Part shown: one piece after another, positions 475 through 64,000 of the stretch
Layout of the letters: each line of letters opens with the position of its first letter
Position numbering within the stretch: position 1 is the stretch's first letter
Assembly: GCF_947568905.1 (NCBI RefSeq)
Contig: NC_079164.1
Coordinates: forward strand, 36,766,001-36,830,000
From: Ostrea edulis
Lineage: Eukaryota
DNA: 64,000 nt
Direction of reading: 5' to 3'
Position numbers and translations under genes: made by a program
The notes under the pieces: generated by a model
Seen by the model: the letters and a program-made list of their open reading frames with translations, nothing else
What the model was told of the DNA's origin: nothing
Databases searched by the model: none

Positions 475-9734
<9,260 letters not shown>

Positions 9735-42974: not shown

Positions 42975-43950
42975 TTTTTAGATCACCTAAGTCACTTGGG
43001 TGACCTATAAATGTCGTTGGTCTTTGTCTTTCATCGTTGGTCAACAACTTTACATTTTTCTTCTTGAAAATTGCAAGGCAAATTGTTACAATTTTTGGTG
43101 TGAAGCTTCTTTAGGATAAGAGGAATGTAAATTGTGAAATTTATGATATTAGCTCCCCAGGGCCTCATGGACGAGTCAAAACTGCAAAAAATGCCAAATA
43201 TTCAAAAATCTTCTCTACTCCCACATGCGAGAGAAAAACTAAATGCATGATTATTATGTTCACGAAGCCCTCTACTAAAATTGTGAAATTCATGGTCCCT
43301 AGGGCTGGGCCAATATGACCATATGATGAACATGTATTGAATCTTGGAAAAAAATCTCTACTCCCAAAAACTAAATGCATGATTATGATGTCCATGAAGC
43401 TCTCTATCAACTTGTGAAATTCATGGCCCCTGGGTCAGAGGTGCAGGCCCTAGGGTGGGGCTAAAATGGCCATATAGTGAAAATGTATTAAATCTTAGAA
43501 AATATTCTCTACTTTCATATATATTTGAGAAAAACTAAATGCATGATTATGATGTCCATGAAGCTCTCTACCTGACTTGTGAAATTCATGGGTCAGGGGT
43601 TCAGGCCTTGGGCTGGACCAGTATGACCACATCATGAAAATGTATTAAAAAATTAGTTTTTCTTCTTTACTTTTACAGTCACGATAGATAAACTAAATGA
43701 TGTCTGTAATGTCCTCCTCTTCAGTTGTGAAATTCATGGTTTCAGGGAGGGGGGGGGGGGGTCAAAATGATTTATGTGCTTCAAACTCTTCTGTAATTTG
43801 AATAGGAATTGTATGCATATTTTGAAAGATATCATAAACGTGCACAATTTTTTAAAGATTCCATATTGAGGCTTAAATGCAAATATGAAATTTCCTGTAT
43901 GGGCTATGATACTCAGGTGACTGTTAAGTCCTGTGGGCCTTTAAATTGTT
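42975..43950 (+). mobile_element. Helentron/pearl-like element with tandem cores
   Basis: TTTTAGATCACCTAAGTCACTTGGGTGACC 5' hairpin; repeated AAACTAAATGCATGATTAT cores; GGTGACTGTTAAGTCCTGTGGGCC end. Confidence 0.65.
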
Positions 43951-44595: not shown

Positions 44596-47500
44596 ATGGC
44601 TGAGTAAGACAAGACTTTTGATATTTATCGTATCTATTTAAGTAATACTCATTTTTGTAAATGATTTAATACATAATGATAAATATTGAAAACTTACAGT
44701 GCATTTCTAGATATTTATATGTAAGCTATACGTTCTTGGAAAAACGGTATCCTACAGTCCGAGTTTTATGAACGTGATGTGCTCTAAGTTGATTGACGGC
44801 TGACTCAAACCGCACTTTATTGTATCATCTAGCCGAAAATTCCCTTAAATAAATTATATATTGTAATTCATATTATTAGTGTCTTATATAGTTATGAAAT
44901 TAATTTCTTGTAAATGTTATAATATTAATGATAAAAGTTCAAAGTTTGCATTTTTACTATTAAAAACATTGACAAAATATTTGGAAAATTTGCAAGAAAT
45001 CATGATATCTTTTTATGTATTGGTATTGAATGATGATTGGGGGGGGGGGGGGGGGGCTTATTCAGTCATCAATACCTATGCATAAAATCTGGAAACTATA
45101 ACTGTGAAAGTAATGTACTTATTGTATATTCAATGCAAAGTGGTTGAAAATGTTTTTTAATAAGTACTTCATGGCTAAATAATTGCAGCGAAATAAAGCG
45201 TAAAGATGCTCAGATGAGAGCCACCATCAACCAGAAACTGGTGGAGACAGGTGAACGTGATAGGTGAGTAACAGACTTTAACTAGAACCTGGTGGAGAGA
45301 GGTGAATGTGATGGGTCAGTAACAGTTGAACCTGAACCTGGAGGAGACAGGTGAATATTATAGGTCAGTAACAGACTTTAACTAGAACCTGGAGGAGACA
45401 GGTGAATGTGATGGGTCAGTAAAGGAGACTGAGACTCATCATAAAAATAATTACATACTAACTTTTATCTCTCATGTATTTCCAACTTTGTTCTGGAGAG
45501 AGCATATTTGTTTTGAAATGGCAACATTTGACAATAAGCAATTTTAAATTGTTCTATTAGAATTCATATGCACGCTTAGCTAATTATCTCTGCCTAACAA
45601 TACTACTACACTGTATATTATTAGCAATAAAGTTTGTGATTCTAATTGTAGATTAAAGGAATTATTGAGAACCAGACTGATAGAGTGTGGCTGGCGAGAT
45701 CAACTCAAGCAGCACTGTAAAGGTACTAAATAATCTCAGCGACAGACAAAACTTCATTCAAGTCCATATTGTAATAGAGGAAATCTAAATTGTAATGGAG
45801 GAAATCTAAATTGTAATAGGGGAATGTTCCTCTTTTGTAATCGAACAATGATGATTGTAAAATATGTTTTGTACCTCATATATCACTAAATGTGGTCTGA
45901 GCGAATAATAAAAACTTGTAACACGTAAGACTTGGAAATCTAAATAGATATATATCTTAAATAGTTAACCATCTTCCATGTGTGTACCCGGTACTATTGA
46001 ATGATATTTATCTGGAATTTAATTTCCAAGTTGAAATAAAGGGAACTGAGGAAAGTAATAAAATATTGGAAATCATACTCAGAATTCTGTGTATTCATCC
46101 ATTATAGTATTTAGGTCTTTGTCATATTTATAAGTAGTTGAACAGAGGTAAGCATACAGTATGTGATTATTATTTTTTTTGCATCTTTTGTGCTGATAAT
46201 ACGCAATGATGTGCAGCTAGGTGTTATGAAAATTTGTCTGGACACTTAGGTCTGCTATCAGGACATTAGATGTCAGAAAATAAACATTTATTATTTATAA
46301 ATTATCATTGTAATATCCCATTCCCTAGTACTCTGTTGGTCAATGAATTGTAACAGTGGCTGGTTTCTTCAATGATAACTGATAAAATTTCACATATTGA
46401 ACTTCTTCAAAGAAATTCATGTTCCAATTTCAACCAAACTGGGCACAAAGCATTTATGGGTAAAGAGGATTCGAGTTTATATTCAAATGAAGGGCCACAT
46501 CCTCTTTAAAGGATAAATTAAATGAGAATTATGAGAAATTGGATATTATATTTCAAAAATCTTCTCATGAACCACTGTGCTAATCTCAGTCAAACTTCAG
46601 AAAAAGTATTCTTGGGTGAAGAGGGTTCAAGTTTATTCAAATGATGGACAACACTATTTAAAAAAAAAAAAACATGAAAAATTGGAGGTTCTGATTTAAA
46701 AATCTTCTCAAGAATCACTGAGCCAATTTAGCCTTTGAGCATGGCACAAGACAACCTTAGGTAACACTTTTCAAAATTTCTACATGGGGTAGGTAAGAAA
46801 TATTGAAAATGGGATGGGTGAGCTTTGTCAAAATTCTCCTCTGGAACCACTGGATCTAGAATTACAAAACTTTGTCAGAATCATCATCAATAATGTATAG
46901 ATTTGATCAAGTTTGTTCAAATGATAACCCATAGGCTTAGAATGAGGCCACAAGGTGGGGATGGGTGGCGAGGGGGATGCTAAACATTCCAGAGGAATAT
47001 GTAAGGAAACCATATTGAAATCTTCTCGGGAACAGTAGAACTATAGTATGTCACCTGAAATGGAAAGCACTCTCATGCAGACTCCGTTTAATTTAAATTG
47101 CTTTCATGTGTGCTTATATTGATGCTTATTGTATCCAAGTTTAAACCATGCCAGTTGAAAATAGACCTCCTCTGGTGAGGATTTTAAGGGTATCTCTGCA
47201 GATACTTTACCCCGACAACCTTCTTTATGTGTAAGAAGGTGGAATTTAATAATTTATCCCCAAAAAACGTTTTGAGTGTACATGTATTCAAATGGTGTAT
47301 TGCCACCATCACACTCCTTTTATTTCCCCTTTTCTTCCCATGAGTTTGTGAAGAGAGAAGGGCTTTTAATAAGCCCTTGTGTGATGAAATATGTATGTAT
47401 GGTTCTGTGTAACATGTGAGGCAGTTTTAATACACACACACACACCCATGCTGGTGTGGGTTGAATTTAATTCTATTTCAAATCACCGGTTGTATAAACC

Positions 47501-48914: not shown

Positions 48915-49107
48915 TAGATCATAAAAATGTATATTTGTGTCTTCATTTAATTAATAGGACTACTGGGAATTAGAAAATGTTATTTGTTAAGATAATGCAC
49001 TTTTTTTTTTCTTTATGCAATGTTTGCAGTTGTAGTGGACTGTATATTGGCCTGGATAGCTCAGTGGTAAGATCACTTCACTATTCCCAGGTTCAGTTCA
49101 TGGTTAA

Positions 49108-49452
49108 CCGGTCGCGGTAGCTCATTGATAGAGCATTCGCTTGGTCATCGGGAGGTCGTGAGTTTGAACCCTGCTTGTGCCATGGCTACATCAAACCCAA
49201 GACATAAACATAGGTAGTGATTGCTCCTTCGTCAAACGCTTGGCATTTAGAAGTGAGAATCATGGGTCTTTTACTTTAGGATATCGCCTTAAAACCGGAG
49301 TTCCCGTACAGCGGCAGGCGTTGGCATGCTAAAGAATCCACATTGCTATGGCCATTAGCGCTAAGCATTGGTCTAAATTTGTGTAGCTTCACCTACAACT
49401 GGTGATGTCTCAGTATGAGTGAAAAATTCTTGAAGGGACATGAAACAATCAA
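49108..49452 (+). mobile_element. tRNA-derived SINE, near full length
   Basis: A-box-like GTAGCTCATTGATAG and B-box-like GAGTTTGAACCC, conserved body, ACAATCAA tail; appears nested in a smaller tRNA-like repeat (second copy at 49615-49690). Confidence 0.75.
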
Positions 49453-50132
49453 TTCCTGGTCCAGCCATAAATTTTCTACTTTTCTGTTACATTTGAATTA
49501 GGTCTTGTAGGTGAAAGTTCTGCTAAAGGTAAGAAAATCTTAAAGGATGACAAAGACAGTTTTTAAAAAAAAAAAAGGAATGTAGTGGCTTGGGCTATAT
49601 GGACCATGGGGTATTAGCCTGGGTAGCTCTCGTTAGAGCACTTGACTAGCAATGCGTGGTCCCGGGTCCGATTCCTGGTCGAGCCAAACTTTTTCTCCCT
49701 GTTTTATAATACGACAGGATCTTTTACAATCCCTCCTCCAGTATACATTAAGATAGAAGGGACATGCATGTAAGCTAGAGTGCAATCTGATGAAATCAAA
49801 CCTCTGCACGCTCTGTAGGCCTTATATGTATTAAATTAGTGGATCGGATCGCAGTAGGTGATAGTCGGACTGGTAGGGGGAAAATTAAATTAGCTCGTAA
49901 AAACTTTTAAAATGATAAAGTAGATTTGATTATTTTATGATTTTCAAAATGAAAATTTCATACTTAATAAAGTAGATTTAATTATTTTATGATTTCCAAA
50001 ACGAAAATTTGATACTTTAATTCTTTTTCTCTCTTTATAATTTGCAAACATATTTTTTTCTCAAAAAGCGCCTGTTCTTTCTCGATAACGATCGCAAAAC
50101 TGAACGGTCCCTTGCACTCTTCTTGGTAACCG

Positions 50133-50140
50133 TGACGTCA
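50133..50140. promoter_or_regulatory. CRE palindrome TGACGTCA in the putative promoter of gene 4
   Basis: Exact match 160 nt upstream of the ATG, in a CpG-richer patch. Confidence 0.4.
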
Positions 50141-50300
50141 CTCATATACAAATGGCGCGAGGTCGCAGAAAAAGCGCAAGTGTTAACATGGCTGGGAAGT
50201 AAAAAGCCACGCTTGACATTATATGACCCTTCTGTAATCGTGTTTACTAGTGGCTTTTCGCCAAATATGTCGTTTTCTGAGATGATACAATAACTCGAAA

Positions 50301-53300
50301 ATGATGGATTCGCAGAGAAGTAGTGGTAAGTTCACGATGAGATTCCAGATAGATAGCAGACGATCGCTATCATTAAAAAGAAATATTTTTTAAATCGGAT
50401 TAGTAATACAGATAATGTACGGGTGATTTATTGGCGCATGCCAACCTGTTAAATAAATGGTATCGTATCTGGCGTGTCTCAAGTGCCATAAAAGAGGAAC
50501 TCCTGGCACAAGTTCGATTTTTTTGTTCATTTGTTCTATTATAAATGTTGACATTTTGTTATCTTTTGTAGAAGTATTGATTAACTCTCTCACGTTTTAT
50601 AGGTTGCTTGAAAAAATGGAATTGATTTATGTGCCATTATTGTCTTAAAACTTACACCTAATCCTGTTGTTTAAACGTGAATAAATTGAAACTGAGACCA
50701 CCTTTACGGGCTTTAGAAACTTTATGTTGAAATCTACGTACAATGGATAAGTATGAACAGTCTCTGTACTTTCATTTGAGTAAGTTAGATGGTAATCTTA
50801 TTTTAACTTTAATTTTATCTGTCTTATCACAATTTATGGAACCTAATCTCAGTTGTTTTTAATTGTATTTATAATTAATATTCTCATGTAATGTAGCCAG
50901 TATTATTTATTTTAGTATTTTACACATTGGCAAACTTGTGTGAATGATGCGCACCGCTATGATGATATGATTTATTCCAAACATACATAACATTGACTAT
51001 GAATGATTTAATTTACAAAATACAATGCAGGATTGAGTTCTCATCTAATTTCAAAACATTTATTTTCTTGTTTAACTTGTCCAGATTTTCAGGCCACTGA
51101 GAGAATATTTCGCAAAGTAATACACCCTGGCCTGGATTCTCTTCGACTTGTAGACAAGAATGGCATCCCCATCAATGCTCCACTCAACAGCATGAAGCAG
51201 AAAATGTTCATCCTTAGTCCAAGAGGGGTTCCAACTCGCGTGACAAATCACGCATACAGTGGCCAACCCATGCGCATGTCACGACCTTATTCTGAAGGGG
51301 TAAGCTGGACGGTTTTTACAAGCATAATTCATGGCCACCTTGAGCATCCTAGTAGCAGATATTCTGAATATCTTAAATGTTGAAATCCTTTTATTTTGGC
51401 AAGAATTTGTTTAACAGGTTTTAGGATTGAAAAATTTGTATTCTCCAAGTGACTCAGTAGTTCTCAGTGAACAACTCTATTTGGTAAGAGTAAACTTGGT
51501 TTGGGTTTCTTACATAATTTGTAATCATTTGATTTTAATTTGTTGTCTGGGTTTGAGAGTGTGTGTGAGGGAATGCAGATTTCTGTGGGTATTAAAGTTT
51601 CCTTGCTTACATGGATTAGATGTAAATGATATAGACTAAGTTCTTGTTGGTGTTAGAAATTATGATGTGTGTCTATGTGTAACAGATTTACCATGTATTT
51701 ACACTTTGTTTTATACTAAAATTTGTACTGTGTAATTAAACATGCCCGGGGGTCTAATGCAACATCAGATCTGCCATTCTAGTCAGCAACATTTACCAAA
51801 TTTAAAACTTAGTTTAGCAAACTGATATGCTAATATATAAGAGGAAATGGACATCTTAAGTAACTACATGTATACAGTATATGGTATACATTATAGCTCA
51901 CCTATAAGCCATAGACTCAGTTGAGCTACATTTATATGTCCTTTGTCTGTTAGTGTTGTCATTTTTTATTTATTCTCCAGAACCTCTAGGTAAAGAACTT
52001 GTACTTGGTTACCCGATCCTAATGCATTTTCTCATGTAAAACATTAAATCCTAATAAAGTTCCCTCTTCTGACACCCACCTCAAACCCTGAAATCATGGA
52101 GTAACCTAACTTGAATCTACACAATATGGGATTGCTTGCAATTTTGAATTGAACAAAAAATGTACCTTTGTGGTTCTTGGAAAGAATAATTCTTTAAAAT
52201 TCATATATTTACATGTATTCCTATGTTAAAACCCTTCTTGCAGTCCCACCCTGAACCTGAGGGATCATCCACAAGTGTTCCTATAATGTAGCATGTACAA
52301 ATTCAACAAAGTCCCATAACTCCTGTAAAATTTGTAGAATCAAAATGCCGGCACAATATGATCAACTACATATGGTGACTAACAATCCTACAAAATTTGA
52401 ACAAAATCCATTGAGCGGTTTCGGAGGAGTTGCGTCCACAATGTGTTCCTATAGTGTAGCATGTACAAATTCAACAAAGTCCCATATAACTCCTGTAAAA
52501 TTTGTTGAATCAATATGTCAGCGCAATATGATTTACTACATATGGTAACTAACAATCCTACAAAATTTGAACAAGATCCTTTGAGTGAAGTGGGATAGAC
52601 GGATGGATGACACCGGTATTGTCCCCTTCTGCATTGCGGTGGTGGACAAAAAACACCACCTAATAAAAATCAAATGACTAGAATACTACAGTGATGGAAG
52701 ATGTATTGATAATTTGTTGGGTTTATTTTTCAGCTCAGCCGTATAGAGATGCCAGATTATTACAATGAAAATACTTACGAATCTTCATCATATGGGTAAG
52801 TTCTGTGAGAAATGACTAGTCTGTCAACATTCTTGATTAACAAGAATTAAAACAAAAAAATATTTGTGTGTGAAAAATGATCTCAGATTCTTGAAATATT
52901 TAAGACTAATTAAAAGGGTTTGATCTTCACAAAATGTTAGAATCTAGACAATGATCAGGTGTGGCTTAAGTCTGCAGGCCTGGATAAGGGGTCACACCAG
53001 GAGTTCCAAGTGTTGTACTGTATATGGATATGTTTGACATAAAGAATTGAGCGTTTGAATGTTTTACACAGAAATACAGTTATCATGGTTATAAAGGAAA
53101 TCTTAAAAAAAAAAATTCAAGAATTAATAGGATATATGATATATATGTCTAATTGATATGTAAGTGTCTGTATATATCGTAGATGTAATTTTGTTATTGC
53201 CATGATCCACGGGGCTAAGATGGAGCCGGGGGAGGGGGGGGGGGGGAGGTATGTGTCAAAGATTTTCTTCCATTTGTAAGTTATTTGTTCAACCAAAATT

Positions 53301-55562
53301 CATAATATTAGATTGCATGTTCATATGATGATCCCTCAGGTTCAGGGTGGGACTGCAAGAAGGGTTTTAACATAGGAATACATGTAAATATATGAACTTT
53401 AAAGAATTATTCTTTCCAAGAACCACAAAGGTACATTTTTTGTTCAATTCAAAATTGCAAGCAATCCCATATTGTGTAGATTCAAGTTAGGTTACTCCAT
53501 GATCTCAGGGTTTGAGGTGGGTGTCAGAAGAGGGAACTTTATTAGGATTTAATGTTTTACATGAGAAAATGCATTAGGATCGGGTAACCAGTGTGCTCCA
53601 TTGGCCCTTGATTTTCATTATGGTTTGAGATATGGATTTGAAACTTGCTGCTCAGCTCGACAGCTGGTGTCATCTTGATATGAGTGAAAATTCTTGAAGG
53701 GCTGTAAAACAAACAGATCCGTGTTCGACATTTGTCAAGCAGATATATAAACTTTCGCATAAAAAATCCCCCTTATTTTCTTCTGTTTAGATTAGAGACA
53801 TCCTAATATGCATTTTCCGAGTTTCTCAATAGTTGTTTCCCTTTGTTGAGCTCGTACACACAGTGAGATGCAAAAATTATATATGTTTTTGTACATACAT
53901 AATATATGTACAAAACCTTATCGCTGCATTCATATATTGCCTAAAGGATGATTACCAGATGTGACATACAGCCACTCGACCTTTAGGGAAACACAATATT
54001 AGTAAGTTTATGAGTATTTGATAATTAAATAGCTCAAGCACTATCATTCTTTGATAAAAGTATCACTTACATCGAAGAGGAAATAAATAATAATGACATA
54101 TTTTAATTAAAAAGCCAAATTCAAACAAATGAAAGGCGGAGATAACGAACAGTGATCAATCTCATAACTTCTATAAGCAATACAAAATAGAGAGTTGGGC
54201 AAACACAGACCCCTGGATATACCAGAGGTGGGATCAGGTGCCTAGGAGGAGTAAGCATCCCCTGTCGATTCTTCATATGTTCAGTTTTATTGTAGATACT
54301 AATGGCTGATGTAAGCAAAATTTATACTTTCATAACTTTTATCATTACTAGTAATTGCAACATTACCAATCAATAGTATATATTTACACATCTTGCCTCC
54401 ACCCAAGTGTTGAATAGAATACTGAATGTACCTCCATCACAAAAGAGATGATATCTCAGAAATTTGGTATTCACAAATTATAATTCTGCACTTCACCGTA
54501 AATTCGATCTACTGAATGTTTCATCCGTCTTTCATCTTCCCATGTTAAGTGGAGGCTGACACCAAATTCCCTGTGTACATCTGCCAACTCAATCTCGCTT
54601 CCCAATCCCTGTTTGTGCCTGTCGCGTCTATCTAACTCAGTAATTACAATATTTATTTAAAAGATAATTATACCGTAAGTGATTTTTTACTTGTAGTTTT
54701 CTTTTTTAAAAAATTTCCTATAACCCTGCATTTCGTTTTATCTGACAAGTCCTTGTTTATCTCCTCTGCTATTAGGTCTATTGATGATGTGCAAGCATGT
54801 GACATATTCCAGAATCAGAAACCAAAATAGTCTATTTTAGATACCACATAAATAAAGCACATGATGCCTCACAATCGCTACCTTACATGTAATTGCTTTA
54901 GTAATGCTATCAGCTTGATTGGTTGGTTGTTTTATATCTTGTTGAGAATTTTTCACTCATATTGAGACATCACCAGTTGCAGGTGAAATACCACAAATTT
55001 TGACCTATGCTTAGCGCTTGCAGCTGTAGTAGTAAGGTTTTTTTTATGTGCTAATGCCTGCCGCAACCAGAGAACATGGGACCTCCGTTTTTAAGGTCAT
55101 GTCCAAAAGACCCGTGATTCTCACTTCTAAATGCCGAACGTTTGACAAAGGAGAACGCTATCAGAATGCTTATAAATATAATATTATTGTGGAGTTACAA
55201 TTAAATCTTGTGCTACCACGTACAATATCTTGATTGCTAGAAGATGTTTTAAGCAAACATCTATACAGTGTATGAATGTTATCTGTGAAACTTGGTGATG
55301 TACTAGCTGTCATTAAATTCTAGAGCACACTAAATTGTACTTGGAAAGGGGTGATTCATGTACTAAAACTTAGAAGGATTAAGTAGCTTTGATGTATATG
55401 CAAGAACTCCACCTCTATTGTTAAATCTCTTATATGAAAAGATTGTTGTCAGAGCTTGAAATGTGGTGTGGTAGGAGCCCAGTGAGTGGTATACCTTGTC
55501 CTAGGCAGAATATATATATCCAGAGTGGTAAATTGATCGTGCTTTGATAGATAAGCAAATAA

Positions 55563-55618
<56 letters not shown>

Positions 55619-56698
55619 CTCTCTCTCCACAATCTTTAACCTTGTATAATAGGCAGATTAGTATGACTGTTATGTATGCGAGGTTGATTTACCTGAGGAA
55701 CCATTTCTTTTATTTCGATTTTTAAAAACCACCGAGGCTACACAGCTCTTAATACCTTTTCAGTGTACCTCACTGCTCCAGTAGTGCTCATATTCAGCTG
55801 ACACGTAAATTGGTTTGTTGTCAATTACATGGAATTTGTTGGTAAACATCAATAAATTGGCTACACGATTAAAAGGACTGATTACCAGCCCAGGCTTGGA
55901 AATGATTCAATACCTTTAAAACTCGAGCACATTTGTCCTAATCAGCCATCCCTTTGTGAAGACCCAGTCTATATTAGCAGTGTACGTTACTTGCCTGAAG
56001 TGTGGTTAAATAGACAGACAATATTAAATAAGTTTTGTTGTGTATAAGCTTGTGTATTTAATTTCACAATAGCGTAATACCCCTTGCTGCATTATGAACT
56101 CTACGAATTGAATGTCTGGGGCTTACATTCATGAAGATATTGATATTTCTATCGAATACAGAAAGATATCAATACTGGCACATAATGTGTATGCCAGGCT
56201 GAAAAAAAACTTCCTAAGAACCCAGCATTTGGGGGCTGGATACCAATATATATTTAATTAGTAACTATGGATGTACGCTCAAGCATGTAAGTGTTAAAAA
56301 AAATTCAAAGTTTAAAAATATTAATTCATTTATTTAATTGTAATGCTTCTTAAATTCAAAGAGGGTTTAATAAAAGATTGGTACTGAGCTATGAAATCAT
56401 GATAGCTGACTGAGAAAGTAATCGCCATGTCATTATTATTCATACAGCACTTCAGTATTGTGACTGTGAAACTTGTCATGTAAATAGATTCTTTTCAAGT
56501 GTAGTACCATATTTAAACATGGTATTAAAAAGCCTTAGATCAGTAGCTTTGTTTGGATGAAGTCTTCAACGCTGATTGTGTATTTGCAGGACACCCCAGT
56601 CTATCACACCATACAGTTCTAAAAGGAATACGTCTAACTTTACCAGGGGGAATCGCCCAATGGTCAAGTCAAAGAGTGCCTCTAGTCGAGGATACCTC
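50301..56698 (+). CDS. Uncharacterised protein, first four coding exons; 3' end not found
   Basis: Exons 50301-50325, 51085-51299, 52734-52795, 56590-56698, with strong splice sites and phases 1/0/2/0. Protein: MMDSQRSSDFQATERIFRKVIHPGLDSLRLVDKNGIPINAPLNSMKQKMFILSPRGVPTRVTNHAYSGQPMRMSRPYSEGLSRIEMPDYYNENTYESSSYGTPQSITPYSSKRNTSNFTRGNRPMVKSKSASSRGYL. No domain recognised. Confidence 0.72.
52006..53590. repeat. 264-bp inverted repeat (arms 52006-52269 and 53327-53590), 262/264 identical
   Basis: Aligned block by block; mismatches only at 52092/53504 and 52199/53397. Confidence 0.95.
52271..52653 (-). mobile_element. Truncated Helentron/pearl-like element with ~2 copies of the 168-bp core
   Basis: Reverse complement of the 5' end and core of the 62942-63866 element. 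Confidence 0.8.
53620..53715 (+). mobile_element. SINE 3' fragment
   Basis: CAGCTGGTGTCATCTTGATATGAGTGAAAATTCTTGAAGGG...AAACAAAC tail. Confidence 0.55.
54122..54270 (-). mobile_element. Interspersed repeat fragment, probably a non-LTR retroelement 3' end
   Basis: Shares GAAGATAACGAACAGTG...TCTCATAA with fragments at 25340-25380 and (inverted) 17835-17880; class assignment is inference. Confidence 0.4.
54916..55152 (-). mobile_element. 5'-truncated SINE
   Basis: Reverse complement of the 49108 SINE body, with an (AACC/AATC)n tail. Confidence 0.75.
55564..55628. repeat. (TA)n(TC)n microsatellite
   Basis: Direct reading. Confidence 0.95.
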
Positions 56699-57222
56699 GT
56701 AAGTACATGTAAATCTTAATTAGTGCATAAGTTTTCTAAACCTTTATATTCATCATGATAACACACAATTTATAAATGGTTTTCAAGACTGAATGCTAAA
56801 GGATGCAACCTGAGAGGTATGACTGGTATTGCAGGTTCATTGTAGTAATTCACTTCAAAACTGTAGATGGTACCAAAATAGCAAAGTTGAAATTAAGGTT
56901 GCCAACAGTAAATATTTAGATGGCCAAGAAAACTCTTTTTAATGGGAATTACTGTCAAACCATGAAAATAAAGAAAAGTTAACACAAAGATACTGACTTT
57001 TCCTGGCAGAACTCGACTGTAAAAATGTGATTCAATGAATGAAATTTATCTTGTCAAATTTTTTTGTCCACATTGGCATTGTGACCAATTTTTTATTCAT
57101 CAAGCAAAAAGAATGTTGCACATGTGAGTTAAAAAACACACAATTCTGAGTCCTGTCCTTAGTGATATAGTAAATTGGGAAACAGGCTTATGTTGAAATG
57201 TATATACATGTTTCAATTCATA

Positions 57223-57584
57223 TTTATAAACCCCAGCCATGAAATGGCAAGGCATATTGTATACATTGTATTACACTTTGTTGTCTTTCTGCATGGCTTT
57301 CTGTCATAATTCAGTTTCCGATCATTATCTATGTTACAGATGTGCATATTCTACTGAAATTTGACACACACATATTTAGAAACATTGTGAGAATATCCAG
57401 GTCTAGTTTTTGACAGAGTTGTGCCCCTTGGACAAACAATTTGCAGTTTCTGAATATTTTCTTATTCATACATGGACATTTTGGATTGAAATTTGGGATA
57501 TACATGTAGATATATCATTAGCATATGCAGGTCATGTACTTTGTTGCAAGCGAGGGCATTTATGTCGCTCCGACACATCTAGTT
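57223..57584 (+). mobile_element. Helentron/pearl-like element
   Basis: TTTATAAACCCCAGCCATGAAATGGCAAGG start; GAGGGCATTTATGTCGCTCCGACACATCTAGTT end with a terminal palindrome. Confidence 0.55.
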
Positions 57585-57764
57585 ATTTAGTATATTTACA
57601 TAAATTTTCTAATATTTTGTCAATGATAGTCCTTTGCTAGTTCAATATATTCATTCATATATATATATATATATATATATAGAAAGCACAAACACACAAT
57701 TATAACACCCAACCTTACATTTACCCCTAGGATCTAAACGATACATGTGATAATCAATCAATTA

Positions 57765-57998
57765 ATATATAAAGCACTAAATAATCACAACTAGGTACTG
57801 AAAATTTTCACCCCAGCCCGGGGTCGAACCAGTGACCTACAGCACCCACCACCTAGCAAGACTGTCAAACCAGTGCGTAAGTCCACTCGGTCACAAGCAC
57901 TGGTTTGACAGTCTTGCTAGGCGGTGGGTGCCATAGGTCGCTGGTTCGACCCCGGGCTGGGGTGAAAATTTTCAGTACCTAGTTGTGATTATTTAGTG

Positions 57999-58008
<10 letters not shown>
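57765..58008. repeat. Long hairpin: 112-bp arms, 4 mismatches, 20-nt loop, tRNA-like boxes
   Basis: Arms 57765-57876 and 57897-58008; B box GGTTCGACCC in both orientations; A-box-like TGACCGAGTGG in the loop (minus); (TA)n follows. Confidence 0.95.
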
Positions 58009-58048
<40 letters not shown>

Positions 58049-58209
58049 TTTTATGTAGAAACTCTTATAGAAATGCTTACATCACATTGAGGATTGCTTA
58101 ATTTGTAATTGAAATATACCTTGAGAATGAAAATTTATATCTTCTCTATTTTACAAAATATGAATATTTGGAATAGATCTAATTGTCATACTTGGTTGTT
58201 TATTATGGA

Positions 58210-58251
<42 letters not shown>

Positions 58252-59409
58252 AACGATGGAAACATGGAGCAATTTCTGTGTAACCAGTTTTGCTTGAAGG
58301 AAATGTTTGGTAGTAAATGTTAATCTGCATCATTTATCCTTATATTTAGCTGAAAGGGGTGGGGTTCTTAGTTGTCTTAAGTGCCCACTATAGATGTTGG
58401 AGTTGTGAGTGTGGCTCACAATATTAAAATTAAGTGTACAGGTTACAATTTTTCAATACAGGCCCAGTACAACGTACAGCCACTAGATGCATTATAAGCT
58501 ATAACGTCTTTGTGGTTTGTATTATGGCCCCTGCTTTGTTTAGTCTTGTGTATATATGGTGTAATATCATGTAGTGTCAGATAAAGAAAGCTACAGAAGG
58601 GAACTTTTTAGTGCTCTACTTTGGGTAGGGTCAGTGAGGTCATATATGTATTATGTACCTTAAGTTATTTTTAATGTGTCAATTCTTAATAACATTTAAA
58701 TGTAATTATTTGAAACCAGGCATGTTTGATTTGAGTATTAATATTTTAATTAATACAGTGAGTTGTTCATTGTAGTGTACATGCAAATGGTACATGGCTT
58801 AGATTTTATCATAGGAATTCTTAATATGACAAGTGTTAAGTTATTCATACTAGTTCCAAAATTCAAATTCTTTGTCGATTTCAATATACACTTATATCTA
58901 CTACTCACAAGAGTACAGATTGGGTTTTTACATGATTCAGAGAGCACTTAAAATCAGAAAGGCTCCAACAACACCTGCATTGTCACATTCATCAATAAAT
59001 GTGTTTTCCTTTTATCAAGCTAACTGCCTCAGATAATACATACACTATTTAAACATATTGACAGTCTGCTTTAATATATTTACTTCTTGATGTCTGAAAG
59101 ATTAAATTGCCCTGCAAGGGTATTGAATTTGTGTACCTGGAAACAGTTTGAGGAAAGTGTTTGATAGAATTGGGGTCTATATTGGGATTACTTGCATACA
59201 GATCTAGACCAACACTGTAGGCAAGTATGTACATCTAGGTAAAAACACTTTGTAATATTGATTTAATTATGTTGCTACATATATGGGAAATATATACATG
59301 TATATATATCTGTGTGTGTGTGTGTTTAGTCATTTCTTGTTGGTATTGTTCATACATTTTGTTCCACTATGTTTTTATTCATAGATGAAATCAAAAGGAA
59401 GTGTAGGTT

Positions 59410-59570
59410 TTCTCTGTCTGTTCTGCTGACTGTCTGTCTGTCTGTCTATGTCTGTCTCCTCATCTGTTCGTCTGACTGTCTGTCTCTCTGTGTCTCTCTG
59501 TTCTGCTGACTGTCTGTCTGTCTGTCTATGTCTGTCTCCTCATCTGTTCTGCTGACCGTCTCTCTCTCTC
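59410..59570. repeat. (CTGT)n/(CT)n compound low-complexity repeat
   Basis: Direct reading. Confidence 0.85.
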
Positions 59571-61195
59571 ACTTTGTCTTCCATACTCCTTTCAATCATT
59601 GCTTTAAGATATTGAATCAGATATAAAACTTGCTATGTAGATTTCTGATGAACATCAACAAATCAAGTTTGACTTTTGTAATGTAAATTGTATGGGCTTG
59701 AAGGCCTCTACCAAAATGGTGAGACTCACAACTTCTGGGCCAATTCCAAGGTGGGGCTATATGATTCACAAACTAAAGATGCATCGAATCTTTTGTTCTA
59801 ATTACTCTTTTCTTTGGAACATCTAATTCATAATATTGGGCTAAAGATTCAAAAGAATTTAAATTATCTGACCACAGGTAATATTTTATTACAGAGAAAC
59901 ACCCAAATTCATACATGGCTTAAAAGTTATTTATGAGTAGATAATTTATACTTGACTGAAACTATGGACATCTGGCCAAGATCAAAGACACTAGCAAATT
60001 GAAATGCCTGTCCAAGCCACAGCTTTGTAATAGAATTTAACACTTGACATTGCTTACAATTGAAGCAGTGTTTCCTGACCTTGAACTTAAGATGAGGTCA
60101 TGGTCACTGACACACAAAATATAAGTGAGTAACATTGTAATAAACAGAGATCAGAAATCACCCTTGACACAAAGGTTGCTTGTTCTCACCATCAATGTGC
60201 AACACTTCTAATAAAGTTGTGTGTGCTTGAATCTCAGGTGACCAATAAGGCCCATGGATCTCTTGGTTTTCATAAGGTCAAGACTCTTTGATTGGAGAAA
60301 AATAAATGTCCATGGGATCTTGCCTGAGAAATTTTCACTCTTTGTGGTTGTTTACTTTATCCTAGAGGATTTGGATTTGTGGGTGTGTCAGTTCCTGGTA
60401 ATTAGGCCGGTCCTTGTCTGAAATGTACTGATTGATAACAGCATCTGAATTTCATAAATTATGTAGTCATACTACTGTAATTGTGAATTGACTATTTTAG
60501 TGTATTGATAATTTTATCAGGAGAGCTGTAGAATCAGGAATTGCAATATAATAGACATTTTGATGATATCTTTTATACAATCAGTGCTACACTAACATAT
60601 AAGTAAGTTATCTGCCTTCATCCAGCCTAACACCAATATTTATGAGTTCCAAGAGGTTAAGCTGCTTTACTTCATTCAGATCCTGACCTTGCAATCTGCT
60701 CAGGGTAATATAGCAGATTATATCCTGCACCAATCTGCCTGTCCACTCAGGAACGAATGTTACTAGTCTGTGAAAAAAGTTAAGGATTATATATCAATAT
60801 TTGTGTAGTAATGTACTTAAGAGAGTATGGAGTTAATGTTGATTGCAATAAAGAAAACAGGTATTAGTACTTTTGTTATGTTGTGTGCACAGTTTTCATA
60901 TTGCGAGACTCGCATAGTTACATTTCCTTTACATGGTAAACAAAATATCTTAAAATGTGAATTAAAATCATTTTGTTTTAGGTCTTTGCTAAGCTGTCTG
61001 TCCACAGCTTTAACCTTCAGGTCATAACTTTTGAATGGTGAGTGTTAGGGTTCTCATATTACATATGAGCATTCCTTGTGGTACCTAAGTTTTTAAACTT
61101 TTGACCTTGGAGTTTGACCTACTTTTAAGAAAAGTTAACATAGACAATAATCTTCTGAACTACTTATCTTAGGGCTTTCAAATTTTGTTTATATT

Positions 61196-62633
61196 TAGGG
61201 ATGTCAACGAATATTCGACTATTTGAATAGTCTTCGATACCACTGATGTTCTACTAATTTTTATATGACCATCTTTAGACAGGATGTATTATGCTTCAGC
61301 GATGTCTGTATGTCCATCTGTCCATCCGTTTATTCGTGGTTTGTTTATTTCATTTTTCTGTCACAAATCAAGCTGAAACTTGTTATGTAGCTTCTTTGTG
61401 GATCACTCTAGATCATGTTGCAATTTTGATCCATTTTGACCTCTCTTGCAGGAGTTTTGTCCCTTTATTTGAAAATCATTGTTAAATGGAGGGTACATAA
61501 TTTGTCGGGCTAACTCCTCCCACAATTTACAAGTGAGGACCATCTTGTTTTAGAGAGTATTTGTATGGATATTGAAGATGTGCATGTGGCAAGAACTTTT
61601 GATTTTCATCCATTTTTAAGGTTTGGGGGGAAATTATATAGAGAGTACATGATTTGTCCTTCTAACTCCTCTCACAGTTTAGAAGCTAGGGTATTTGTAA
61701 ATAACTTGAAGATGTGCATAGTGCAAGGATTTTGATTCTCAACAATTTTTAATTTTCTTAGACATTTTGAATATTTACAGGTTGTTGAACTTGGTCGAAT
61801 TTGGGGAAATATTTTACACACAGAACTCTTCGTTTGTCTATCTACCTTCTGTCACAGTTTGAAGCTAAGACCATTTATTCATATTTTGTAAAGAAAGTAT
61901 GTCACAGCCTGATGATGACTGATATTACCTGAAGCAAAGTTCTACAAATATGGCTTAAGAAAAACACTGTAAGCATTTTCATGGGTGTATTATGTACCGT
62001 TTACAGTACTCTTGTTTTTATTCGAATAGTCAGTAAAAAAAAAAATTGTGCATACTGATAATTTACCCATTTGAAATTAACACCATCACTGTTTCATTGA
62101 GGTTTACTCGGTGTCCTTACTTTGAATTCACTCAATCAAAGAATATTACATGTATATCCATTCCTTGTCATCATTATAGAAATTCATTAGAATCCAAATG
62201 CCACCAAAATCAAGTGTGTGGCAATTTTTTAAATGTGATTTAGATAGTAGAAATGTTAAGTGTACTTTATGCAACTCTGTATTATCCTTTTGCGGAACAA
62301 CTAGAAATATGTTGTATCAATTTTAAACAAACACCCAACTTTTAGTGCTGCATATGTGTGGTGATTTACCATGCAGTGCAAAAAACGATTGGAAATTCCC
62401 TAGTGAAGTCACACGAAAAAAACAAAAGCAAGCAACAGTCTGAAAAGGTAACAATTTCAATTGCGAACATGATCGTGAAAGACTACCTTTGTCTTAGTAT
62501 TTTGCTGGGAGAGGGGTTTACGGAATTCGTCAACATTATTTCTCCAGGATTCAATATTCCAAGTCGGAATACAGTAAAGTCAAGAATAGAAAAAATGAAT
62601 GAGGATCAGGAGATGCTACTTAATCTGTGCTAG
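61196..62633 (+). mobile_element. hAT (ZBED1-like) transposon remnant: left TIR, nested insertion, broken BED-transposase
   Basis: TAGGGATGTCAACGAATATTCG end at 61196. From 62198, MPPKSSVWQFFKCDLDSRNVKCTLCNSVLSFCGTTRNML (BED finger), then a frameshift to LNKHP. Downstream IANMIVKDYLCLSILLGEGFTEFVNIISPGFNIPSRNTVKSRIEK fits hAT transposases. No right TIR seen. Confidence 0.8.
61256..62010 (+). mobile_element. Helentron/pearl-like element nested in the hAT left end
   Basis: TTTTATATGACC start, (GTCC/ATCC)n, repeated cores, GTAC...GTACTCTTGTT end; hAT subterminal ATTCGAATAG resumes afterwards. Confidence 0.6.
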
Positions 62634-62941
62634 ATAATGTGAAATTGGCCTCTAATAGATAGAGTGCCATGCATGTTGTCTTAATAAATTGTCATAATAG
62701 ATGTTCACATTGGGGTCTACCTAACAGGACTTCTATGGTTAACTGAACACCAGTATGCTTATCATCAAACAGTCATTATAACCCTGAACCAAGGTCATTT
62801 GGCTGTGGTCAAGGACACAGGTAAAAATGTTATAAATACCTGATACAGGCTTCAACTTTGTAATAGAGAGACAGCAGAAACCCGTACTGACCTTAATAGT
62901 TGCTTATGACCAGACACTTCATTCATGCCCATGAACCAGTT

Positions 62942-63866
62942 AATTGTCCCCCACCGCAATGCGGAAGGGGACATAGAAATATCGGTGTCTGTCCCACTTC
63001 ACTTTGTGGACGCAACTCCTCAGAAACCGCTCAACAGATTTTGTTCATATTAAGTAGGATTGTTAGTCACCATGTGTAGTTGATCATATTATGCTGGAAT
63101 TTTGATTCAACTATTTTGACAGGAGTTATGGGACTTTGTTGAATTTGTACATGCTACACTATAGGAACACTTTGTGGACGCAACTCCTCAGAAACCGCTC
63201 AACGGATTTTGTTCATAATTTGTAGGATTGTTAGTCACCATGTGTAGTTGATCATATTATGCCGGAATTTTGATTCGACAATTTTGACAGGAGTTATGGG
63301 ACTTTGTTAAATTTGTACATGCTACACTATAGGAACACTTTGTGGACGTAACTCCTCCGAAACCGCTCAATGGATTTTGTTCATATTTTGTGGGATTGTT
63401 AGTCACCATGTGTAGTTGATCATATTATGCTACCATTTTAATTTGACAAATTTTATAGGAGTTATTGGACTTTGTTGAATTTGTACATAGTACACTATAG
63501 GAACACTTTGTGGACGCAACTCCTCCGAAACCGCTCACCGGATTTCATTCAGATTTTGGAGGATTGTTAGTCACCATTTGTAGTTGATCATATTGCGCTG
63601 TCATTTTGATTTGACAATTTTTACAGGAGTTATGAAACTTTGTTGAATGTGTATATGCTACACTATAGAGACACTTTATGGACACAACTCTTCCGAAACC
63701 GCTCACCGGATTTCATTCAAATTTTGTAGGATTGTTAGTCACCATATGTAGTTGATCATATTGTGCCGACATTTTGATTCTACAAATTTTACAGGAGTTA
63801 TGGGACTTTTGTGCTTCAACTTTTTTTGCAGCGGTGGGGGACATGGCTACGAGTAGCAATCTTGTT
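62942..63866 (+). mobile_element. Complete Helentron/pearl-like element carrying a 168-bp satellite array (~5 units)
   Basis: Subterminal inverted repeats TGTCCCCCACCGC (62945) / GCGGTGGGGGACA (63831); terminal GCTAC-GA-GTAGC palindrome and CTTGTT end; units start at 63001, 63169, 63337, 63505, 63673. Confidence 0.85.
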
Positions 63867-64000
63867 CTTTAGCTGGAAACTACATGCTAATTGCAGAAAT
63901 TTCTGTGTACTAAAAAAAAGAATTTGTTTCCACATATCTTAAATAAAAAGATGTCAATTACCTATGAAGCAATGACCTTTCTGTTCATTCAGTTAAGTCC

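What the first reader, a model, noticed from the sequence alone, without database searches (positions are those of the whole stretch)
52006..53590. 264-bp, 99%-identical inverted repeat clamps a single frame-shifting exon
Seen: the arms differ at two positions, both A-C mismatches in the sense RNA, and enclose 1057 nt containing the 62-nt exon 3 of gene 4. Skipping that exon gives DTPVYHTIQF-stop in exon 4. The arm is old, decayed repeat DNA. The right copy sits in continuous element context, while the left copy abuts a truncated different element. Known: long intronic duplexes promote exon skipping or back-splicing, and are ADAR and DHX9 substrates; A-C mismatches are favoured editing sites. 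Inference: a recent template-switch inverted duplication, or ongoing arm conversion, created a structural on/off switch and a potentially invertible segment.
Basis: partly seen in the sequence, partly recalled or inferred. Interest (0 to 1): 0.85.

Follow-up and report, generated by a model that had tools for sequence, protein, structure and literature searches.

The report
Young inverted duplication around an oyster exon
A 264-base stretch of old repeat DNA in a flat-oyster gene was recently copied in reverse into the neighbouring intron, so the two copies bracket a small conserved exon; this is real, but it is an ordinary kind of mutation and nothing shows that it switches the exon on or off.

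Summary
Arms 52006-52269 and 53327-53590 are 264 nt each and 262/264 complementary, with sharp ends and a 1057-nt spacer. Both differences would be A·C mismatches in the sense RNA.

The window is Ostrea edulis chromosome OX387704.1, and the gene is the uncharacterised LOC125657780. The enclosed 62-nt exon (52735-52796) is real and old: its peptide is conserved in Crassostrea, Saccostrea and Pinctada. Skipping it gives DTPVYHTIQF-stop.

- The arm is about 1.5 decayed units of a repeat family built of 168-180-nt units.
- Only the right arm continues into a further unit, so it is the source.
- The left arm abuts a Helentron-like tandem-repeat element that lacks its 5' box.
- There are no target-site duplications and no homology beyond the arms.
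- The orthologous Saccostrea introns have no arm.

Seven short-read contigs carry the neighbouring ORF. The three retrieved all stop 30 nt into the left arm, so that junction is not private to the assembly.

The "on/off switch" and "invertible segment" remain untested. All five RefSeq isoforms that contain exon 2 include the exon, whose splice sites look strong, and no skip product was found. The best reading is a young, probably neutral, templated inverted duplication that should form a 264-bp intronic dsRNA and be an ADAR substrate. The scan holds other unchecked notes of inverted duplications in this genome.

The parts
52006..52269 (+). Left arm: the derived, inverted copy (264 nt) in intron 2 of LOC125657780
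   Evidence: coordinates, two mismatches; the family match ends inside the arm and there is no further unit on its inner side; three independent read-set contigs end at 52035, 30 nt into the arm.
53327..53590 (-). Right arm: the source copy, part of a longer decayed array of the same repeat family, in intron 3
   Evidence: the arm-free model aligns to 53317-53567, running past the arm's inner end; an adjacent unit in the same orientation.
53178..53326 (-). Continuation of the decayed repeat array beyond the inner end of the right arm. This stretch is not duplicated.
   Evidence: 53178-53227 matches model positions 30-79, E 0.0012 against the four 300-nt flanks. By eye, 53240-53326 keeps the order of the unit's motifs.
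52735..52796 (+). 62-nt exon encoding LSRIEMPDYYNENTYESSSYG (last codon split). Constitutive in the annotation and frame-shifting if skipped.
   Evidence: Orthologous peptides in Crassostrea, Saccostrea and Pinctada. Orthologous DNA in Saccostrea.
52268..52654 (+). 5'-truncated Helentron-like element: 1.9 units of a 168-170-nt tandem repeat plus a 3' segment with a hairpin box (52620-52648). It starts exactly at the inner end of the left arm.
62945..63843 (-). Fuller copy of the same tandem-repeat element: 4.8 units flanked by a 13-nt perfect subterminal inverted repeat, TGTCCCCCACCGC. Used as the reference for what the 52-kb copy lacks.
51085..51299 (+). Exon 2 of LOC125657780. Its donor at 51299 is the upstream partner in both the inclusion and the skip junction.
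56590..56699 (+). Exon 4. It reads GTPQSITPYSS... after exon 3, and DTPVYHTIQF-stop if joined directly to exon 2.

Best explanation
This is a young, lineage-specific inverted segmental duplication in Ostrea edulis. A 264-nt piece of a decayed repeat array in intron 3 of the uncharacterised gene LOC125657780 (the right arm) was copied in reverse orientation into intron 2, 1057 nt upstream. It landed at a break that also removed the 5' end of a Helentron-like tandem-repeat element. The likeliest mechanism is a replicative or repair template switch to the opposite strand of nearby DNA (FoSTeS/MMBIR-type, or long templated end-joining). Because the break lay in one intron and the template in the next, the two copies now bracket the conserved 62-nt exon. 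In the pre-mRNA the arms should pair into a duplex of about 262 bp that loops out the exon, with 465 nt of intron upstream of it and 530 nt downstream. That duplex is a predicted substrate for ADAR hyper-editing and may cause some exon skipping followed by nonsense-mediated decay. The structure is most likely a neutral or slightly deleterious by-product, not an evolved switch. What is shown: the repeat, its polarity (right arm is the source), the truncated neighbouring element, the antiquity of the exon, and its inclusion in annotated mRNAs. What is inferred: the template-switch mechanism, dsRNA formation in vivo, editing, and any effect on splicing.
For: The inverted repeat and its two transition differences. 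The window is identical to O. edulis GCA_947568905.1 OX387704.1. The exon peptide is conserved in Crassostrea, Saccostrea and Pinctada, while the orthologous Saccostrea echinata and S. cucullata introns contain the exon but no arm. The exon therefore predates the repeat, and the repeat is not one transposon carrying its own insides. The arm belongs to an old family built of 168-180-nt units, at about 60% identity to other copies. Only the right arm is continuous with further family sequence. The left arm abuts an element lacking its 5' subterminal box. There are no target-site duplications, and there is no homology beyond the arms. The last two bases of the arm (TC) also fit the tandem-repeat unit, which may be a 2-nt microhomology. 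Seven Logan contigs carry the neighbouring ORF; the three retrieved, from three read sets, all end at 52035, which is what a k=31 graph does where a sequence has two contexts. The minimum-free-energy fold of the 1585 nt, and of all of introns 2+3 (5.3 kb), pairs 262 of 264 arm positions; duplex energy is -473 kcal/mol. All five RefSeq isoforms with exon 2 include the exon. Across metazoans, young inverted repeats are the main substrates of A-to-I hyper-editing (PMC9989829), and molluscs have ADAR1 (PMC6651903).
Against: The mechanism is inferred from junction anatomy alone. One 2-nt microhomology has a 1-in-16 chance of being accidental, and the original target sequence is unknown. The arm's copy number in the rest of the genome could not be measured, since only 77 kb of O. 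edulis DNA was available. A young dispersed element with exactly these ends is therefore not formally excluded. Only one of the four junctions was confirmed in independent reads. No RNA data could be consulted, so a real effect on exon inclusion is neither shown nor excluded.
Confidence: 0.68

Rival explanations
1. One reading: the duplex is a structural switch that controls inclusion of the frame-shifting exon, giving productive mRNA or a transcript removed by nonsense-mediated decay. ADAR or DHX9 would modulate it, and the spacer may also invert.
For: The geometry is right. The arms lie in the two flanking introns, 465 and 530 nt from the exon, and are predicted to pair almost completely. 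Skipping gives an early stop. The gene is otherwise heavily alternatively spliced: three alternative first exons, an internal promoter exon and a cassette exon. In mammals, inverted intronic repeats promote skipping and back-splicing (my own knowledge; bioRxiv 10.64898/2025.12.17.694518, listed).
Against: All five annotated isoforms that contain exon 2 include the exon. The acceptor has a long pyrimidine tract and the donor is G|GTAAGT. No skip product is in the protein collection. The arms are absent from Saccostrea and differ by only 0.76%, so there has been little time for selection to act on the structure. A 62-nt single-exon circle is smaller than typical circular RNAs (my own knowledge). 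Nothing links the DHX9 gene reported in the same window to this structure.
Confidence: 0.1
2. The arms are two independent insertions, in opposite orientation, of a young 264-nt non-autonomous transposon (MITE or SINE-like).
For: Both copies have identical, sharp ends. Oyster genomes are rich in short non-autonomous elements; Helitrons make up 9.88% of the O. edulis genome (PMC11136912).
Against: Neither copy has a target-site duplication, and there are no terminal inverted repeats, no tail and no Helitron-type ends. There is no other close copy in 77 kb. The right copy's inner end falls in the middle of a repeat unit that continues into the flank, so it is not an element end.
Confidence: 0.07
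3. The inverted repeat is old and its arms are kept nearly identical by ongoing gene conversion.
For: Closely spaced inverted repeats do convert. Two differences in 264 nt is compatible with recent homogenisation.
Against: There is no decayed homology outside the 264 nt on either side. An older, longer duplication with a conversion tract would usually leave such homology. The arms are absent from Saccostrea, though that is a distant comparison.
Confidence: 0.08
4. The repeat is an assembly artefact: a chimeric or mis-joined read produced a false inverted copy.
For: Oyster genomes are highly heterozygous and repeat-rich, and only one assembly could be examined.
Against: Contigs from three read sets (SRR25445066, ERR13868511, SRR25445064) contain the left flank joined to the first 30 nt of the arm and all break there. 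The two differences are clean transitions and there are no indels. The whole structure is 1.6 kb and would sit inside a single long read (inference). The exon in the spacer is in the correct orientation and frame.
Confidence: 0.05

Closest known systems
Inverted intronic repeat pairs flanking exons (for example inverted-repeat Alus in primates), which form pre-mRNA duplexes, are hyper-edited by ADAR, are unwound by DHX9, and promote back-splicing or exon skipping
   Same: Two reverse-complementary repeat-derived sequences sit in the introns on either side of an exon, on the transcribed strand, about 1 kb apart. They are predicted to pair almost fully.
   Different: The arms are not two insertions of a mobile element. 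They are one old repeat fragment and its recent inverted copy. At 264 bp and 99% identity the duplex is far more perfect than typical Alu pairs. The host is a bivalve. No editing, circular RNA or skipping evidence is available.
Templated inverted duplications from template switching (FoSTeS/MMBIR, or snap-back and polymerase-theta templated insertions)
   Same: A copy of nearby sequence lies in inverted orientation at a breakpoint, with an accompanying loss of target sequence (the 5' end of the neighbouring element), no target-site duplication, and a possible 2-nt microhomology.
   Different: At 264 nt it is longer than usual polymerase-theta insertions and much smaller than the kilobase-to-megabase FoSTeS/MMBIR events described in human disease (my own knowledge). 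The mechanism cannot be proven from a single junction set.
Helitron/Helentron elements with central tandem repeats in oysters (CvA/pearl-type; satellite DNAs associated with them, such as Cg170/HindIII)
   Same: The element next to the left arm has 168-170-nt tandem repeats. In its fuller copy these lie between 13-nt subterminal inverted repeats, which matches the architecture described for oyster Helentrons in PMC11136912.
   Different: It is only the neighbour and breakpoint partner of the duplication, not the duplicated sequence.
Foldback or long-terminal-inverted-repeat DNA transposons
   Same: Long, nearly identical inverted termini around an internal segment.
   Different: The internal segment contains an exon that is orthologous and syntenic in Saccostrea, which has no arms. 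There are no target-site duplications, and the right terminus is continuous with its flank.

Membership tests
Exon-flanking intronic inverted repeat (IRAlu-like complementary pair) | Two reverse-complementary sequences in the introns on either side of an exon of one transcription unit | tested here: met
   The arms lie in introns 2 and 3 of LOC125657780. The exon at 52735-52796 maps to RefSeq isoforms.
Exon-flanking intronic inverted repeat (IRAlu-like complementary pair) | The arms are predicted to pair with each other and not locally | tested here: met
   262 of 264 positions are paired arm-to-arm in minimum-free-energy folds of 1.6 kb and of 5.3 kb. Duplex energy is -473 kcal/mol, against -40 and -50 for each arm alone.
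Exon-flanking intronic inverted repeat (IRAlu-like complementary pair) | Observed consequence in RNA: a skip junction, a back-splice junction or clustered A-to-G changes | not testable with these tools
   No RNA-seq access. The only proxy, a search for a truncated skip product, found nothing.
Templated inverted duplication (template switch) | The derived copy is an inverted copy of nearby sequence, and source and copy can be told apart | tested here: met
   The right arm is continuous with the further repeat array. The left arm ends abruptly against unrelated DNA.
Templated inverted duplication (template switch) | Microhomology at the novel junctions | tested here: inconclusive
   Two nucleotides (TC) are shared at the inner junction. 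The outer junction cannot be assessed because the pre-event sequence is unknown.
Templated inverted duplication (template switch) | No target-site duplication; often a deletion at the target | tested here: met
   No direct repeat flanks either arm. The neighbouring element lacks its 5' box and part of its array.
Two insertions of a young MITE or SINE | Target-site duplications and defined element termini at each copy | tested here: not met
   No target-site duplications. The right copy's inner end lies inside a repeat unit that continues into the flank.
Two insertions of a young MITE or SINE | Many near-identical copies elsewhere in the genome | tested here: inconclusive
   None in the 77 kb available. 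The rest of the genome could not be searched.
Foldback or long-TIR transposon | The internal segment belongs to the element and arrived together with the arms | tested here: not met
   The enclosed exon is orthologous and syntenic in Saccostrea, which lacks the arms, and its peptide is conserved in other bivalves.
Helentron-like element with central tandem repeats (the element beside the left arm) | A tandem-repeat core between conserved end segments carrying subterminal inverted repeats | tested here: met
   Copy at 62945-63843: 4.8 units of 168 nt between the perfect 13-nt inverted boxes. The copy at 52268-52654 has only the 3' box.
Helentron-like element with central tandem repeats (the element beside the left arm) | Sequence identity with a named oyster family (CvA/pearl, Cg170/HindIII, OedSat) | not testable with these tools

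The most novel reading that the evidence does not exclude
The left arm is a segregating structural variant in O. edulis whose 264-bp intronic duplex measurably lowers inclusion of the frame-shifting exon, so that it acts as a natural allele for protein dosage through nonsense-mediated decay. It may also be one instance of a recurrent process in this genome in which breaks inside Helitron-type elements are repaired by copying nearby DNA in reverse. Another unchecked note of this scan, on the same chromosome, describes an inverted duplication whose inner breakpoint also lies in a Helitron-type element.
Probability: 0.12. Interest if true: 0.55.

Novelty: new member of a known kind. Interest (0 to 1): 0.3.

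Why it matters
If the duplex affects splicing, this would be a clean natural case outside vertebrates. It has one exon, one near-perfect 264-bp intronic duplex, a known source and copy, and a clear read-out (frameshift and decay). That would make it useful for asking how bivalve ADAR and helicases handle self dsRNA. As it stands, it documents a small templated inverted duplication with a breakpoint in a Helitron-type element, in a genome where such elements are very abundant. It is an ordinary class of structural mutation, and the host gene has no known function and no Pfam domain.

Tried and rejected
- **Other junctions in independent assemblies.** I looked up ten window ORFs by exact sequence, a 66-aa edge-truncated ORF across the right outer junction, and the 59-aa spacer ORF. 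None is on record, so only the left outer junction has independent support.
- **RNA evidence for skipping.** A search with the first 110 residues of isoform X6 for short products returned only two intron read-through ORFs.
- **Orthologous loci.** Isoforms that are not the longest are not on record. The longest isoforms gave O. edulis, S. echinata and S. cucullata. No closer Ostrea species could be reached, so the duplication could not be dated by phylogeny.
- **Naming the tandem repeat or the arm family.** The satellitome paper's supplements are not held.
- **Rfam scan of 49000-64000.** Only sub-threshold miRNA-like hits on the other hairpin at 57833-57940.
- **ARAGORN.** No tRNA in 49000-64000.
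- **Pfam.** Nothing on exon peptides or on the full protein.
- **Single foldback transposon reading.** Rejected, because the exon is ancestral.
- **A·C mismatches as a signal.** Rejected, because it is a 1-in-4 outcome.
Full report
**Observation**

The repeat finder reports one inverted pair in 51000-54600: arms 52006-52269 and 53327-53590, 264 nt, 99% complementary, 1057 nt apart. Across the whole window it is the longest and cleanest of five inverted pairs. The only other young one is a 112-nt hairpin at 57765-58008.

A base-by-base comparison finds exactly two differences:
- 52092 A opposite 53504 C
- 52199 A opposite 53397 C

Both would be A·C mismatches in a + strand transcript. Identity drops to random immediately outside both ends of both arms. 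Local alignment of the 200-nt outer flanks scores below the shuffle mean, and the inner flanks score only marginally above it.

**Organism and gene**

Exon 2's peptide (from window 51093-51299) was scored against 1.8 billion representative proteins and found a small bivalve family. Two Ostrea edulis RefSeq proteins of LOC125657780 match the window's exon 2, exon 3 and exon 4 peptides exactly. The locus fetched for isoform X1 is identical to window 49301-64000. It comes from GCA_947568905.1, chromosome OX387704.1. The protein has no Pfam domain and is annotated as uncharacterised in every species.

The exons as mapped here:

| Exon | Coordinates | Note |
|---|---|---|
| Exon 2 | 51085-51299 | donor used in both inclusion and skip junctions |
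| 62-nt exon | 52735-52796 | encodes LSRIEMPDYYNENTYESSSYG, last codon split |
| Exon 4 | 56590-56699 | reads GTPQSITPYSS... after exon 3 |

**The exon is old and is used**

Its peptide is present in:
- Crassostrea angulata and C. gigas (LSRLEVPEYNNENLYEQPTYY)
- Saccostrea echinata and S. cucullata (LSHLEKPDYYNENSYDPPTY)
- Pinctada, recognisably

In the Saccostrea genomic loci the exon lies at the same relative position, between the cassette exon and exon 4. Neither Saccostrea intron contains anything resembling the arm. All five O. edulis RefSeq isoforms that contain exon 2 (X1, X2, X3, X5, X6) include the exon. X4 starts from an internal first exon downstream of the repeat. The acceptor has a long pyrimidine tract and the donor is G|GTAAGT. 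The exon therefore predates the repeat, and the repeat cannot be a single transposon that brought its interior with it.

**What the arm is**

Within 77 kb of O. edulis DNA the arm has no close copy other than its partner. It is distantly related, at about 60% identity, to arrays of units 168-180 nt long at 8071-8551, 43195-43768 and 46420-47098, and to one in the gene's downstream part. A profile built only from those arrays, with the arms left out, hits the right arm at E 5e-12 (53317-53566) and the left arm at E 2e-8 (52030-52268). The arm corresponds to about 1.5 units.

**Which arm is the source**

The arm-free profile's alignment to the right copy runs about 10 nt past the inner end of the arm. 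I then searched the four 300-nt flanks alone. Only the right-inner flank gave a significant match: 53178-53227, same strand as the right arm, E 0.0012. By eye, 53240-53326 keeps the order of the unit's motifs. So the right arm is a window cut out of a longer decayed array, roughly 53178-53590.

The left arm ends abruptly at 52269 against unrelated sequence: a 168-170-nt tandem repeat (1.9 units, 52268-52585) followed by a 3' segment ending near 52654. The same element occurs at 62945-63843 on the other strand. There it has 4.8 units between perfect 13-nt subterminal inverted boxes, TGTCCCCCACCGC. That is the architecture described for oyster Helitron/Helentron elements with central satellite-like repeats (PMC11136912). 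The copy beside the left arm has only the 3' box, at 52636-52648. No 5' box exists anywhere to its left, on either side of the arm.

**Mechanism (inferred)**

- Neither arm is flanked by a target-site duplication. The arm has no terminal inverted repeats, no tail and no Helitron-type ends.
- The last two bases of the left arm (TC) also fit the tandem-repeat unit at that phase. This may be a 2-nt microhomology, but the chance of that by accident is 1 in 16.
- The 5' box and part of the array of the neighbouring element are missing and are not found on the far side of the arm.

Taken together, the event was an insertion of an inverted copy of nearby DNA together with a deletion at the target. 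That is the signature of a template switch during replication or break repair. It is not the signature of transposition.

The arms differ by 2 of 264 positions (0.76%), both transitions at non-CpG sites. The event is therefore recent on the scale of within-species diversity (inference). Conversion of a longer, older repeat is unlikely because no decayed homology surrounds the arms. Conversion confined to exactly these 264 nt cannot be excluded.

**Is it an assembly artefact?**

Seven contigs from Logan short-read assemblies carry the ORF that reads from exon 2 into intron 2. The three retrieved come from SRR25445066, ERR13868511 and SRR25445064. They match the window at 99.9-100% and all end at 52035, exactly 30 nt into the left arm. 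That is how a k=31 assembly graph behaves where a sequence has two different upstream contexts. So in those read sets the left flank is joined to the arm, and the arm start occurs at least twice. The other three junctions could not be retrieved. An artefact is unlikely but is not fully excluded.

**Likely behaviour in RNA**

ViennaRNA pairs 262 of the 264 arm positions with each other. This holds both for the 1585-nt unit and for the whole of introns 2+3 (5.3 kb). Duplex energy is -473 kcal/mol, against -40 and -50 for each arm folded alone. The exon would sit in a 1057-nt loop, 465 nt from the left arm and 530 nt from the right arm.

Long duplexes formed by young inverted repeats are the main A-to-I hyper-editing substrates across metazoans (PMC9989829), and molluscs have ADAR1 (PMC6651903). 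Editing of the arms is therefore a reasonable prediction. In mammals, loop-out of an exon can promote skipping or back-splicing (my own knowledge). Here skipping would give a premature stop.

Against a strong effect:
- The annotation includes the exon in every relevant isoform.
- The splice sites look strong.
- A search for a truncated skip product found none. This is weak evidence, because no O. edulis transcript assemblies of this gene appear in that collection.
- A 62-nt single-exon circle would be unusually small (my own knowledge).
- Two A·C mismatches among two transitions is a 1-in-4 outcome.
- The DHX9 gene that earlier notes place in this window is a coincidence.

**Verdict**

It is best classed as a young templated inverted duplication. 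It has created an exon-flanking intronic duplex, a known kind of structure, here in a bivalve and with unusually clear source-and-copy polarity. The 'on/off switch' and 'invertible segment' are untested hypotheses with modest prior probability.

The scan holds 123 notes on inverted duplications in this genome. One of them (s1-302053, same chromosome, unchecked) also places an inner breakpoint in a Helitron-type element. That hints at a recurrent mutational process and is the more interesting lead.

Noticed in passing
window 51421-51486 (+): A 66-nt in-frame cassette exon (VLGLKNLYSPSDSVVLSEQLYL, acceptor ...ttaacag, donor gtaaga) lies between exon 2 and the 62-nt exon. Its peptide appears in C. 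gigas X10 and C. virginica X5 isoforms, and its DNA is conserved in Saccostrea (78-80%). None of the six O. edulis RefSeq isoforms contains it. It lies outside the loop, upstream of the left arm.
   Followed up: partly
window 55806-56315 (+): An intronic block is 76-78% identical to both Saccostrea species over about 500 nt, which is better conserved than exon 4. It ends in an alternative first exon (ATG at 56267, MDVRSSM, donor after 56287) used by isoform X4. Saccostrea X3 isoforms start the same way. It is probably a conserved internal promoter and first exon.
   Followed up: partly
window 57765-58008: A second young hairpin: 112-nt arms, 96% complementary, 20-nt loop, flanked by (TA)n runs, in intron 4. 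Rfam gives only sub-threshold miRNA-precursor-like hits (MIR844, 47 bits against a gathering score of 70). ARAGORN finds no tRNA there. A 2-mismatch match to the Helentron-like box lies at 57921-57933.
   Followed up: partly
window 8071-8551, 43195-43768, 46420-47098; L005 about 25500-25740: Arrays of a repeat family built of 168-180-nt units, with a core like ...GGCCCCA.CCTA.CCC.GGG.CATGATTT.AACAAACTTGAATCT.... The arm is a decayed member of this family.
   Followed up: partly
window 53660-53720, 49395-49456, 35514-35563, 54924-54979: A short dispersed repeat of about 60 nt (73-80% identity) has one copy 70 nt outside the right arm. One Logan contig starts at 49409, inside the 49395-49456 copy.
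   Followed up: no
window 51973-51998 (-): A weak match (E 0.086 in the four-flank test) of the left-outer flank to the same unit family, in the opposite orientation to the left arm. A 35-nt BLAST hit to 8520-8554 points the same way. The break may have fallen next to another decayed fragment of the family.
   Followed up: no
window 51995-52005 and 52270-52276: The bases on either side of the left arm, ACTTGTACT and CACAAGT, would form a 6-bp hairpin (ACTTGT/ACAAGT) around the insertion point if joined. This may be chance.
   Followed up: no
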